A DNA stretch of 64,000 bases, taken from NCBI GenBank assembly GCA_965153285.1, contig OZ229111.1. One strand, written 5' to 3'. Numbering within the stretch: position 1 is the first letter of the stretch; each line of letters begins with the position of its first letter. Made by a program: the position numbers and the translations under genes. The notes below the pieces were generated by a model that had not been told where the DNA came from, ran no database searches, and saw nothing but the letters and a program-made list of their open reading frames with translations. The stretch comes from Podarcis tiliguerta. Lineage: Eukaryota. Of this stretch, positions 33,054-49,438 are shown one piece after another.

Positions 33054-33073
33054 ATGCCCGCCTCCGGAGGGGA
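33054..33073 (+). CDS. VCP-like: VCP-like exon 1 (MPASGG-D)
   Basis: agcATGCCCGCCTCCGGAGGGGA|GTAAGT; phase 2, as in human VCP exon 1 (MASGA-D). Confidence 0.85.
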
Positions 33074-48000: not shown

Positions 48001-49438
48001 CATCCGTGAGGCCATCGAGATGGAGATCAAGGCAGAACGGGAGCGTCAGCGTCATAAATGTGCCGCCATGGTATGGTAGTGAGACTTCCCCACATCCCAA
48101 CAGGGCCAGGCAGGATTCCTTCCATTGCCTCATGCCCTGCTCTTCCCCTCAGTAACATATTCTGCATAGTATTCTGGGAACTTTATGGCCACCCCTCATC
48201 GTGGGGCCACAGTGTCCTCGATTGCATTGATCTCACAGGGCTTTGGAGCTTGTAAGGATGCAACTCGACAACATTTCCCCCCCTTTTGTGATAGGATGAC
48301 GATTATGACCCTGTGCCAGAGATCCGACGCGATCACTTTGAGGAAGCAATGCGCTTTGCACGCCGCTCTGTCAGCGATAATGACATACGCAAGTATGAGA
48401 TGTTTGCCCAAACGTTACAGCAAAGCCGTGGCTTTGGCAACTTCAGGTAATGTTGGAGAACTTTTTGCTTCCTCTGCCCCAAGCTAGAGTTTCACTTCAG
48501 TGCAGTGGACAGGGCCTGGGTGAGGAACTTGGCCCCACAGATGTTGTTTGACCAGAACTCCCACAGCTGGGATTAGTGAAGGCTGAAGTTCAACAACATT
48601 CCTAGGTTCCCCTTTCCTAGGATAGGGGGAAATTTGTTCTTTTTTTGAAACAAGATACAGGAACCTCAGCTTGACTCTACTATGTAGCTTGACACTCTAC
48701 TGTCTAGCTTGACTCTCTGCTAACTTTTGTAAGTTGCTTTGGTTGCCTTGGGCAAGATAAAGTGACTAACAAATTAAATAAATTAAATAATAACAGTACT
48801 ATCAAGATTTCCGAGGGTTGCATTCCGTCATCCCAAGCAACTGAAAATAACAGTTTTTATTCTTATTATTAAATATATGACCCAGTGAGGGCTCTCAAGT
48901 TAGTTTAAGATGTTAAATTCCATATACAAAATGAAGGGTACCATTCAAAATAAGTGCAATAGAATTAAACACACACACACACACACGAGCTAAAATAAAC
49001 AAAAGACCATTCAAAAACAGCATTGCCCTGACCCAGTTATGGAGATCCACAGGCTTGTGTGCAGGTGATACCCGCAGACTCTGAATTGCAGGTATAAATT
49101 AGATGTGCATTCAGATGCACATTAGAATTAGCACCTGAGTGAGGATACAGTCCCTCCACACTGCATTACTTTAAACGGCACGGGTTTTTATCTGCATTGG
49201 GATGTGCATCACATCCACATTATTTTAATGCCTTGTTTATGTAGAGTAAAACCAGATCAGTGCCCACATTCATAAAACAGAATAACCCAACTTTCTCTTG
49301 CATGAAACCAAGGCCATTCTTTATCTCCACAGGTTTCCATCTGGAAAGCAGAGCACCAGTGGAGAGGGAAACAGTGGAAGCAGCAGTGGCCAAGGAAGCC
49401 TTTTCCAAGAGGAGGGCGATGATGATCTTTACAACTGA
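33054..49438 (+). CDS. VCP-like: Transitional endoplasmic reticulum ATPase-like (VCP/p97/Cdc48 paralog), 18 coding exons, 2424 nt, 807 aa
   Basis: All 18 exons have GT-AG boundaries and join in one open frame. N domain, D1 ([22 protein letters not shown]) and D2 ([20 protein letters not shown]) are intact. About 100 substitutions versus recalled human VCP. Confidence 0.95.
34826..34937 (+). CDS. VCP-like: VCP-like exon 2 ([37 protein letters not shown])
   Basis: 112 nt, AG/GT boundaries, homology to the VCP N-terminus. Confidence 0.95.
36249..36421 (+). CDS. VCP-like: VCP-like exon 3 ([23 protein letters not shown]...RVRLGDVVS)
   Basis: 173 nt, AG/GT, N domain. Confidence 0.95.
36658..36883 (+). 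mobile_element. Tc1/mariner (Tigger-like) MITE in intron 3
   Basis: TA|CAGTGGTACC...GGTACCACTG|TA. Confidence 0.9.
37107..37249 (+). CDS. VCP-like: VCP-like exon 4 ([20 protein letters not shown]...[11 protein letters not shown])
   Basis: 143 nt, AG/GT; visible in ORF 37099-37281. Confidence 0.95.
37476..37717 (+). mobile_element. Tc1/mariner (Tigger-like) MITE in intron 4
   Basis: TA|CAGTGGTACCTCGGGTTA...TAACCCGAGGTACCACTG|TA perfect TIRs. Confidence 0.9.
37780..38010 (-). mobile_element. MIR/CORE-like tRNA SINE
   Basis: GGGATTTGAACCC (reverse B box) and a CORE-like ACAACCC..GGTAGG...GCTGAGAGA segment. Confidence 0.6.
38520..38650 (+). CDS. VCP-like: VCP-like exon 5 ([44 protein letters not shown])
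   Basis: 131 nt, AG/GT. Confidence 0.95.
39154..39285 (+). CDS. VCP-like: VCP-like exon 6 ([44 protein letters not shown])
   Basis: 132 nt, AG/GT. Confidence 0.95.
40245..40347 (+). CDS. VCP-like: VCP-like exon 7 (D1 Walker A GPPGTGKT)
   Basis: 103 nt, AG/GT. Confidence 0.95.
40666..40799 (+). CDS. VCP-like: VCP-like exon 8 (D1 Walker B IIFIDE)
   Basis: 134 nt, AG/GT. Confidence 0.95.
41803..42051. mobile_element. Tc1/mariner MITE, second family, in intron 8
   Basis: TA|CAGTGGAACCT...AGGTTCCACTG|TA. Confidence 0.85.
42208..42343 (+). CDS. VCP-like: VCP-like exon 9 ([24 protein letters not shown]...ALRRF)
   Basis: 136 nt, AG/GT. Confidence 0.95.
42707..42819 (+). CDS. VCP-like: VCP-like exon 10 ([38 protein letters not shown])
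   Basis: 113 nt, AG/GT. Confidence 0.95.
43639..43803 (+). CDS. VCP-like: VCP-like exon 11 ([29 protein letters not shown]...MDDFQ)
   Basis: 165 nt, AG/GT. Confidence 0.95.
44450..44572 (+). CDS. VCP-like: VCP-like exon 12 ([41 protein letters not shown])
   Basis: 123 nt, AG/GT; D1-D2 linker. Confidence 0.95.
44736..44948 (+). CDS. VCP-like: VCP-like exon 13 (D2 Walker A GPPGCGKT, pore loop MWFG)
   Basis: 213 nt, AG/GT. Confidence 0.95.
45766..45944 (+). CDS. VCP-like: VCP-like exon 14 (D2 Walker B LFFDE ... FIIGATN)
   Basis: 179 nt, AG/GT. Confidence 0.95.
47546..47675 (+). CDS. VCP-like: VCP-like exon 15 ([43 protein letters not shown])
   Basis: 130 nt, AG/GT; D2 arginine fingers. Confidence 0.95.
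47912..48070 (+). CDS. VCP-like: VCP-like exon 16 ([33 protein letters not shown]...RHKCAAM)
   Basis: 159 nt, AG/GT. Confidence 0.95.
48295..48446 (+). CDS. VCP-like: VCP-like exon 17 ([50 protein letters not shown])
   Basis: 152 nt, AG/GT. Confidence 0.95.
49333..49438 (+). CDS. VCP-like: VCP-like exon 18, terminal ([34 protein letters not shown])
   Basis: AG acceptor at 49331-49332, 106 nt to TGA; ends in a DDDLYx PUB/PUL-binding, HbYX-type motif. Confidence 0.9.

What the first reader, a model, noticed from the sequence alone, without database searches (positions are those of the whole stretch)
33054..49438. An intact second p97/VCP gene: a divergent Cdc48-family segregase paralog
Seen: 18 GT-AG exons join into an open 807-aa frame with all catalytic motifs intact (both Walker A/B, arginine fingers, D2 pore-loop WF) and its own CpG-island promoter. 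Established: canonical VCP is near-invariant across amniotes and single-copy in mammals. This protein differs at roughly 100 positions (~87% identity, hand count against recalled human VCP), starting at the N-terminus ([24 protein letters not shown] vs [23 protein letters not shown]). Inference: it is a functional paralog under purifying selection, so this lineage probably runs a two-gene p97 system. It may already be auto-annotated as 'TER ATPase-like', but I know of no functional characterisation.
Basis: partly seen in the sequence, partly recalled or inferred. Interest (0 to 1): 0.85.

Follow-up and report, generated by a model that had tools for sequence, protein, structure and literature searches.

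The report
Ancient second VCP/p97 gene in lizard
This lizard carries an intact, probably expressed second copy of the essential protein-unfolding machine VCP/p97. The copy belongs to an old vertebrate gene lineage that also occurs in a carp-family fish and is missing from mammals, and nobody appears to have studied it.

Summary
Eighteen GT-AG exons (33054-49438, + strand) join into an open 807-residue frame. It has CDC48_N, CDC48_2, two AAA cassettes, both Walker A/B pairs, both arginine-finger pairs, the D2 Trp-Phe pore loop and a CpG-island promoter.

It differs clearly from canonical VCP. Identity to human p97 is 47/57 on exon 3 and 40/46 on exon 4. Against canonical-type exon calls it is 47/55 on exon 11 and about 41/53 on exon 16. 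A hand count gives about 87% overall.

It is a paralog, not a fast-evolving ortholog. On exon 11 it sits in a well-supported clade of 26 exon calls (98/92). That clade includes a cyprinid fish and stands apart from 43 canonical vertebrate-type rows. Exon 16 gives the same grouping more weakly.

Three other species keep exon 11 at 54-55/55 residues while their intron flanks are unalignable, which indicates purifying selection. Eighteen transcriptome-sized runs hold about the share of words expected for spliced mRNA.

The downstream neighbour is an EP1-type prostaglandin receptor, which fits a 2R ohnolog but does not prove it.

The scan noted this same stretch before (s1-827808), not other DNA.

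The parts
32400..33500 (+). CpG-island promoter and 5' UTR region of the VCP-like gene
   Evidence: GC 0.645 and CpG o/e 0.76, against 0.23 in the gene body. GC peak in the composition profile.
33054..33073 (+). exon 1 (start codon, 6 codons + 2 nt)
   Evidence: ATG with A at -3; donor GTAAGT.
34826..34937 (+). exon 2 (N-terminal region)
   Evidence: AG/GT boundaries, frame kept.
36249..36421 (+). exon 3 (N domain, double-psi barrel)
   Evidence: Pfam CDC48_N 1.4e-17. 47/57 identical to human p97.
37107..37249 (+). exon 4 (N domain)
   Evidence: 40/46 identical to human p97 residues 103-148.
38520..38650 (+). exon 5 (N domain, beta-barrel part)
   Evidence: Pfam CDC48_2 2e-07.
39154..39285 (+). 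exon 6 (N-D1 linker, start of D1)
   Evidence: AG/GT boundaries, frame kept.
40245..40347 (+). exon 7 (D1 Walker A)
   Evidence: Pfam AAA 2.7e-10. Walker A at 246-253.
40666..40799 (+). exon 8 (D1 pore loop, Walker B)
   Evidence: Pfam AAA 4.6e-12. Walker B at 301-306.
42208..42343 (+). exon 9 (D1 sensor-1 and second region of homology)
   Evidence: Pfam AAA 9.4e-11.
42707..42819 (+). exon 10 (D1 arginine finger 363, D1 lid start)
   Evidence: AG/GT boundaries, frame kept.
43639..43803 (+). exon 11 (D1 lid and D1-D2 linker); carries paralog-specific states
   Evidence: Pfam AAA_lid_3 2.1e-12. Exon-call comparison and tree.
44450..44572 (+). exon 12 (D1-D2 linker, start of D2)
   Evidence: AG/GT boundaries, frame kept.
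44736..44948 (+). exon 13 (D2 Walker A and Trp-Phe pore loop)
   Evidence: Representative search: 683 proteins at E<=1e-30.
45766..45944 (+). exon 14 (D2 Walker B, sensor-1)
   Evidence: Pfam AAA 2.9e-14. Walker B at 574-579.
47546..47675 (+). exon 15 (D2 arginine fingers 636/639)
   Evidence: printout.
47912..48070 (+). exon 16 (D2 lid); strongly paralog-specific
   Evidence: Exon-call comparison and tree.
48295..48446 (+). exon 17 (C-terminal helix region)
   Evidence: AG/GT boundaries, frame kept.
49333..49438 (+). exon 18 (disordered tail; ends Leu-Tyr-Asn, then the stop codon)
   Evidence: About 20 of the last 35 residues differ from recalled human VCP.
50070..50075 (+). first canonical polyadenylation signal after the stop (candidate 3' end, about 630 nt UTR)
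   Evidence: Pattern found by script. Not confirmed by reads.

Best explanation
This is an intact member of an old vertebrate sister lineage of VCP/p97, which I call 'VCP2' here. It arose by DNA-level duplication before ray-finned fishes and tetrapods split, most likely in the 2R genome duplications. It is kept in squamates and at least one cyprinid fish and is absent from mammals. It most likely encodes a working hexameric type II AAA+ unfoldase. D1 would drive ring assembly and D2 would thread substrate through its aromatic pore loop. Shown here: the gene structure, the catalytic motifs, the separate clade, exon conservation across species, and an EP1-type neighbour. Inferred: it is transcribed, it works as a segregase, and it selects cofactors somewhat differently from canonical VCP. 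The last point rests on an N domain about 15% changed and a tail ending Leu-Tyr-Asn instead of Leu-Tyr-Gly. The animal also keeps the canonical gene (inferred, not shown).
For: Structure and motifs. The open 807-residue frame spans 18 GT-AG exons with all catalytic motifs. The Pfam architecture is confirmed exon by exon. The N-domain exons match human p97 at 1e-27 and 7e-25, but with only 82% and 87% identity.

Exon 11 grouping. Exon-sized ORF calls fall into three groups: lizard-type, a paralog-type group including KAL0202561.1 of Cirrhinus mrigala, and canonical-type. In the ML tree the lizard gene sits in a 26-row clade at 98/92. That clade is separate from 43 canonical-type rows, and both lie inside a vertebrate-type set (75/69) against 52 other rows.

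Exon 16 grouping. The same kind of group is recovered, more weakly: 10 rows on one side of a branch, SH-aLRT 72.

Constraint and exon structure. Three other species have 54-55/55 identical exon 11 residues with unalignable intron flanks. The exon borders are the same in the paralog-type calls I read (P0270-P0272, P0276, P0279).

Expression. Eighteen runs of 65-148 million letters, from six studies, hold 0.17-0.24 of the sampled words. A spliced mRNA alone would give 0.196.

Synteny. The tail-to-tail neighbour is an EP1-type prostanoid receptor: EP1 7.6e-80, FP 1.8e-73. By my knowledge human VCP lies at 9p13.3 beside DNAJB5 and FANCG. Human PTGER1 lies at 19p13.12 near DNAJB1.
Against: - No canonical VCP locus was found in this genome, because no tool could search it.
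- No reads were laid, and the runs' RNA status is the tool's guess.
- Only one member of the paralog clade carries a species name. The 'canonical' and 'non-vertebrate' groups were labelled from their sequence patterns and my memory of human and zebrafish VCP.
- The trees rest on 54 and 46 columns.
- The other flanking genes could not be identified, so the 2R origin rests on a single neighbour.
Confidence: 0.8

Rival explanations
1. It is the only VCP gene of this lizard: the canonical ortholog, evolving unusually fast and moved to a new neighbourhood.
For: No second locus was shown here. The scan's notes for this genome mention no other VCP.
Against: It clusters at 98/92 with exon calls from other species, including a cyprinid fish, apart from 43 canonical-type rows. 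Shared derived states recur in a second exon. Its neighbour is an EP1-type receptor, not the genes that flank VCP in human (my knowledge).
Confidence: 0.04
2. It is a recent, lineage-specific duplicate. One form of this would be a sex-chromosome gametolog like the W-linked 'TER ATPase-like' gene of chicken.
For: Chicken has VCP on Z and a VCP-like gene on W (PMC13594839; PMC9724561).
Against: The clade includes a fish. Divergence from canonical is about 13%, with shared derived states across distant species. Three species with unalignable introns carry almost the same exon 11.
Confidence: 0.06
3. It is an old paralog that no longer does anything useful in this lizard: intact by chance, or a drifting transcribed relic.
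For: Expression evidence is indirect. No dN/dS was computed.
Against: There are 2424 nt of open frame over 18 exons with every splice site and catalytic motif intact. The D1 region is about 95% like canonical by hand count. Exon 11 is conserved where the introns are not. The CpG island is unmethylated-looking.
Confidence: 0.05
4. It is an old paralog, but from a small-scale duplication, not the 2R genome duplications.
For: Only one neighbour supports paralogon synteny. GIPC1, PKN1 and DNAJB1 were not found in the window.
Against: The clade lies inside the vertebrate-type set and predates the fish-tetrapod split. The EP1-type neighbour matches the region that holds the DNAJB5 paralog DNAJB1 in human (my knowledge).
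Confidence: 0.3

Closest known systems
Canonical VCP/p97 (human, mouse; many solved structures)
   Same: It has the same domain order (N, D1, D2, tail), the same length within one residue, and all catalytic motifs. D1 is about 95% identical by hand count. Exons 11 and 16 begin and end where the homology ends in canonical-type exon calls.
   Different: About 13% of residues differ, where canonical VCP hardly varies among amniotes. The N domain is about 15% changed (exon 3 47/57, exon 4 40/46). About 20 of the 35 tail residues differ, and the last residue is Asn instead of Gly. The genomic neighbourhood is different.
C. elegans CDC-48.1 / CDC-48.2 pair
   Same: Two closely related Cdc48 genes in one animal, both catalytically complete. 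This is a precedent for partly redundant p97 paralogs.
   Different: The nematode pair is an independent duplication. This one is vertebrate-specific and old.
Chicken W-linked 'transitional endoplasmic reticulum ATPase-like' gene (PMC13594839, PMC9724561)
   Same: A second VCP-like gene in a sauropsid carrying the same automatic name.
   Different: The chicken gene is a Z/W gametolog of canonical VCP. The lizard gene belongs to a clade shared with a fish and sits beside an EP1-type receptor.
NVL, SPATA5 and SPATA5L1 (other vertebrate type II AAA proteins of the Cdc48 group)
   Same: Two AAA cassettes in tandem.
   Different: By general knowledge of these families they are far more distant and have other N-terminal regions; I did not compare them here. 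The lizard gene has the CDC48_N and CDC48_2 domains of VCP itself.

Membership tests
Cdc48/VCP/p97 (type II AAA+ segregase) | N domain made of CDC48_N and CDC48_2 | tested here: met
   Pfam CDC48_N 1.4e-17 on exon 3 and CDC48_2 2e-07 on exon 5. p97 N-domain structures are the best PDB hits.
Cdc48/VCP/p97 (type II AAA+ segregase) | Two AAA cassettes, each with Walker A and Walker B | tested here: met
   Motifs at 246-253, 301-306, 519-526 and 574-579. Pfam AAA on exons 7, 8, 9 and 14.
Cdc48/VCP/p97 (type II AAA+ segregase) | Arginine fingers in both rings and an aromatic D2 pore loop | tested here: met
   Arg 360/363 and 636/639, Trp-Phe 552-553, read from the translation.
Cdc48/VCP/p97 (type II AAA+ segregase) | C-terminal acidic tail ending Leu-Tyr-Gly (docking site for PUB and PUL domains) | tested here: not met
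   The tail ends Asp-Asp-Asp-Leu-Tyr-Asn. Leu and Tyr are kept and the last residue is changed. What this does to binding is unknown.
Cdc48/VCP/p97 (type II AAA+ segregase) | Hexamer formation and ATP-driven unfolding | not testable with these tools
   The spliced protein has no reference, so neither structure nor complex prediction could be run.
Canonical VCP orthology group | Near-invariant sequence among amniotes | tested here: not met
   82%, 87%, 85% and about 77% identity on exons 3, 4, 11 and 16.
Canonical VCP orthology group | Groups with canonical vertebrate VCP in a tree | tested here: not met
   It falls in a separate 26-row clade, 98/92.
Canonical VCP orthology group | Conserved neighbours (DNAJB5, FANCG, PIGO in human; my knowledge) | tested here: inconclusive
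   The only identified neighbour is an EP1-type receptor. FANCG and PIGO were not searched for. The flank ORFs gave no Pfam hit.
2R ohnolog of VCP lost in mammals | Duplication older than the fish-tetrapod split and inside vertebrates | tested here: met
   A cyprinid sequence lies in the clade. The clade lies inside the vertebrate-type set at 75/69. Short alignment; most rows carry no species name.
2R ohnolog of VCP lost in mammals | The two genes lie on paired paralogous chromosome regions | tested here: inconclusive
   The EP1-type neighbour fits the human 19p13.12 region (plus my knowledge). GIPC1, PKN1 and DNAJB1 were not found in the window.

The most novel reading that the evidence does not exclude
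Non-mammalian vertebrates, including cyprinid fishes related to the zebrafish model, run two p97 machines. The second would form its own hexamers or mixed hexamers and pick a different set of cofactors, through its altered N domain and its Leu-Tyr-Asn tail. It would then be a specialised segregase, and also a hidden backup that could mask phenotypes in fish VCP disease models.
Probability: 0.3. Interest if true: 0.7.

Novelty: new member of a known kind. Interest (0 to 1): 0.5.

Why it matters
VCP/p97 is one of the most studied and most conserved eukaryotic ATPases. It is a human disease gene and a drug target, and it is treated as single-copy in vertebrates.

A second, constrained p97 lineage about 13% diverged gives a natural experiment. 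The changes are concentrated in the cofactor-binding N domain and the C-terminal docking tail. That shows which surfaces of p97 can change while the motor stays intact.

If cyprinids such as zebrafish carry it, VCP loss-of-function and disease models in fish may need re-reading for redundancy.

My searches of the held literature found no paper on it. It is probably already auto-annotated in genome databases as 'TER ATPase-like'. Ohnologs lost in mammals are common, so this extends a known family and is not a new kind of system.

Tried and rejected
- **Joined protein.** It was never sent to a search tool. Searches were exon by exon, by reference. The joined frame was built only inside local scripts, for translation, local BLAST against fetched proteins and column extraction. 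For that reason structure prediction, complex prediction and a full-length database search were left out.
- **Alignment A1.** Aligning the exon pieces to a full-length homolog misplaced most pieces, and I discarded it.
- **Representative search with exon 13**. It gave no full-length vertebrate representative.
No DNA of orthologs could be fetched, so there is no dN/dS, no fish synteny and no full-length tree.
- **The listing of cluster members** gave a species name for only one exon call.
- **Idea rejected.** I first thought the gene carried the human disease change at Arg159. The PDB alignment showed that the changed residue is human Arg147 (to His). Arg155 and Arg159 are conserved.
- **Flanking genes.** The ten longest flank ORFs and ten CpG-island ORFs gave no Pfam hit. 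Fuzzy motif scans for GIPC1, PKN1, DNAJB1, DDX39A, TECR and NDUFB7 found nothing credible.
- **AU test**. Run on the 23 rows I had named beforehand, it did not reject holding them together (p 0.35). The free tree adds three more rows to the clade.

Full report
**What is there**

The window is vertebrate DNA. Notes of this scan call the genome a lizard, and one follow-up calls it a lacertid.

On the + strand between 33054 and 49438 I rebuilt the gene from stop-free segments and splice sites. It has 18 exons. Every acceptor is AG and every donor is GT. The CDS is 2424 nt, giving 807 residues with a single terminal stop. Introns are 163-1752 nt long.

The start codon has A at -3. It lies in a CpG island: 32400-33500 has GC 0.65 and CpG observed/expected 0.76, against 0.23 inside the gene. 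The first AATAAA after the stop is at 50070.

Pfam, exon by exon, gives CDC48_N, CDC48_2, AAA (D1), AAA_lid_3 and AAA (D2). Both Walker A/B pairs, both arginine-finger pairs and the D2 Trp-Phe pore loop are present.

**How different it is from canonical VCP**

- PDB alignments to human p97 give 47/57 identities on exon 3 and 40/46 on exon 4.
- Against canonical-type exon calls from public assemblies, exon 11 is 47/55 and exon 16 about 41/53.
- My hand count over the whole protein against recalled human VCP is about 102 substitutions plus one extra residue near the N-terminus, or about 87%. By region this is roughly 85% in the N domain, 95% in D1 and 90% in D2, with 20 of the last 35 residues changed.
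- The recalled sequence matched the PDB alignments exactly on the two exons checked. The whole-length number is still memory-based.
- The protein ends Leu-Tyr-Asn instead of Leu-Tyr-Gly.
- An early idea that it carries the human disease change at Arg159 was wrong. The changed residue is human Arg147, and Arg155 and Arg159 are kept.

**Ortholog or paralog**

The spliced protein has no reference, so I searched exon by exon and left out the joined search.

Exon 11:
- The ORF around exon 11 retrieved 120 exon-sized ORF calls from genomic contigs. They fall into three groups.
- Three calls are identical to the lizard or one residue away.
- About 45 calls carry the canonical vertebrate pattern.
- More than 20 share derived states with the lizard gene. 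These states are Asp and Ile/Leu at residues 441-442 where canonical has Glu-Val, Gln or Lys at 454 where canonical has Arg or Lys, and a non-Asp residue at 429.
- One of these is NCBI KAL0202561.1 of the cyprinid Cirrhinus mrigala.
- All vertebrate-type rows, the paralog group included, share Ala423 and Lys426. The remaining rows have Gln there and another residue at 426.
- An ML tree on the 54 usable columns puts the lizard gene and its three near-copies together at 100/99. It puts 26 rows, including the fish, in one clade at 98/92. That clade stands apart from 43 canonical-type rows. Both lie inside a vertebrate-type set at 75/69 against 52 other rows.

Exon 16:
- The ORF around exon 16 shows the same thing more weakly.
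- Nine other calls share Ile679, Ala703 and, in seven of the nine, Lys709-Ala710 with the lizard. Canonical rows have Met, Ser and Arg-Arg at those positions.
- Together with the lizard they are one side of a branch with SH-aLRT 72.

Caveats: the alignments are short. Only one row of the paralog clade carries a species name. The 'canonical' and 'non-vertebrate' labels come from sequence patterns and from my memory of human and zebrafish VCP.

**Constraint**

The three near-identical exon 11 calls come from other species. Their translated intron flanks bear no resemblance to this window's flanks or to each other, yet 54-55 of 55 exon residues are identical.

In the paralog-type calls I read in full (P0270-P0272, P0276, P0279), the homology stops at the same exon borders. 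That points to duplication of genomic DNA, not to a retrocopy. Together with the intact 18-exon frame, this indicates purifying selection.

**Expression**

The look-up of sequencing runs on 43630-49620 listed DNA-sized runs that hold 0.42-0.99 of the sampled words. It also listed 18 transcriptome-sized runs (65-148 million letters) from six studies and four organism codes, holding 0.17-0.24. A run that held only the spliced mRNA part of this stretch would hold 0.196.

This fits transcription and splicing. 

**Neighbourhood**

Tail to tail with the gene, on the minus strand, lies a two-exon prostanoid receptor gene: 53167-54042, plus a second exon within 52108-52398. Its best solved relative is human EP1 at 7.6e-80, ahead of FP at 1.8e-73.

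By my knowledge human VCP lies at 9p13.3 beside DNAJB5 and FANCG. PTGER1 lies at 19p13.12 near DNAJB1, the paralog of DNAJB5. That is the pattern expected of a 2R ohnolog, as another first-reader note on this same stretch proposed (s1-827808).

I could not identify any other neighbour. CpG islands at about 20.4-21.5 kb and 58.4-59.2 kb have no recognisable coding exon. I put the 2R origin at roughly 55-60%, and an old vertebrate duplication of some kind at about 85%.

**How it probably works**

Every residue class needed for a p97-type motor is in place, and D1, the ring-forming domain, is the best conserved part. The protein most likely forms ATP-driven hexamers that extract and unfold ubiquitylated clients. 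With D1 this similar, mixed rings with canonical VCP are conceivable.

By my reading against recalled contact residues, the cofactor groove residues of the N domain are mostly kept, while surrounding surface positions and the C-terminal docking tail have changed. A shifted cofactor preference is therefore the most likely functional difference. All of this is inference.

**Literature and novelty**

Full-text searches found no paper on a vertebrate VCP ohnolog or second VCP gene in fishes or reptiles. They found only the chicken Z/W case.

The gene is probably auto-annotated in public genomes. Ohnologs lost in mammals are common. I therefore file it as a new, uncharacterised member of a known family, of moderate interest, mainly for p97 cofactor biology and for fish VCP models.

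Noticed in passing
window 52108-54042 (-): A two-exon prostanoid receptor gene: first coding exon 53167-54042, second within 52108-52398 with the TM7 motif. Its best solved relative is human EP1 (7.6e-80), closely followed by FP (1.8e-73). Whether it is the true PTGER1 ortholog or a further paralog is open.
   Followed up: partly
window 20400-21500 and 58400-59200: Two further CpG islands (GC 0.64 and 0.55; CpG o/e 0.78 and 0.83) with no recognisable coding exon. 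No Pfam hit on their ORFs and no GIPC1, PKN1 or DNAJB1 motifs. They may be promoters of unidentified genes or non-coding RNAs.
   Followed up: partly
window 32704-32727: A perfect (AAC)8 microsatellite about 330 nt upstream of the start codon, at the edge of the promoter CpG island.
   Followed up: no
proteins P0413, P0500 (exon-16-like ORF calls): Exon calls from unknown organisms that mix states. They share Glu-Ala at 702-703 with the lizard paralog, but have Arg-Arg at 709-710 and Thr at 679. They may come from another lineage of the family.
   Followed up: no
runs X22-X24 (organisms F, G): Genome-sized runs of two other organism codes hold 0.42-0.51 of the 31-letter words of 43630-49620. 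Closely related species therefore carry this locus with near-identical sequence over about half of it.
   Followed up: no
window 1-20000 and 21500-32000: About 30 kb upstream of the gene has no ORF with a Pfam match among the longest ones tested and no high coding-score segment. It looks intergenic or is a very large intron of an unidentified gene.
   Followed up: partly
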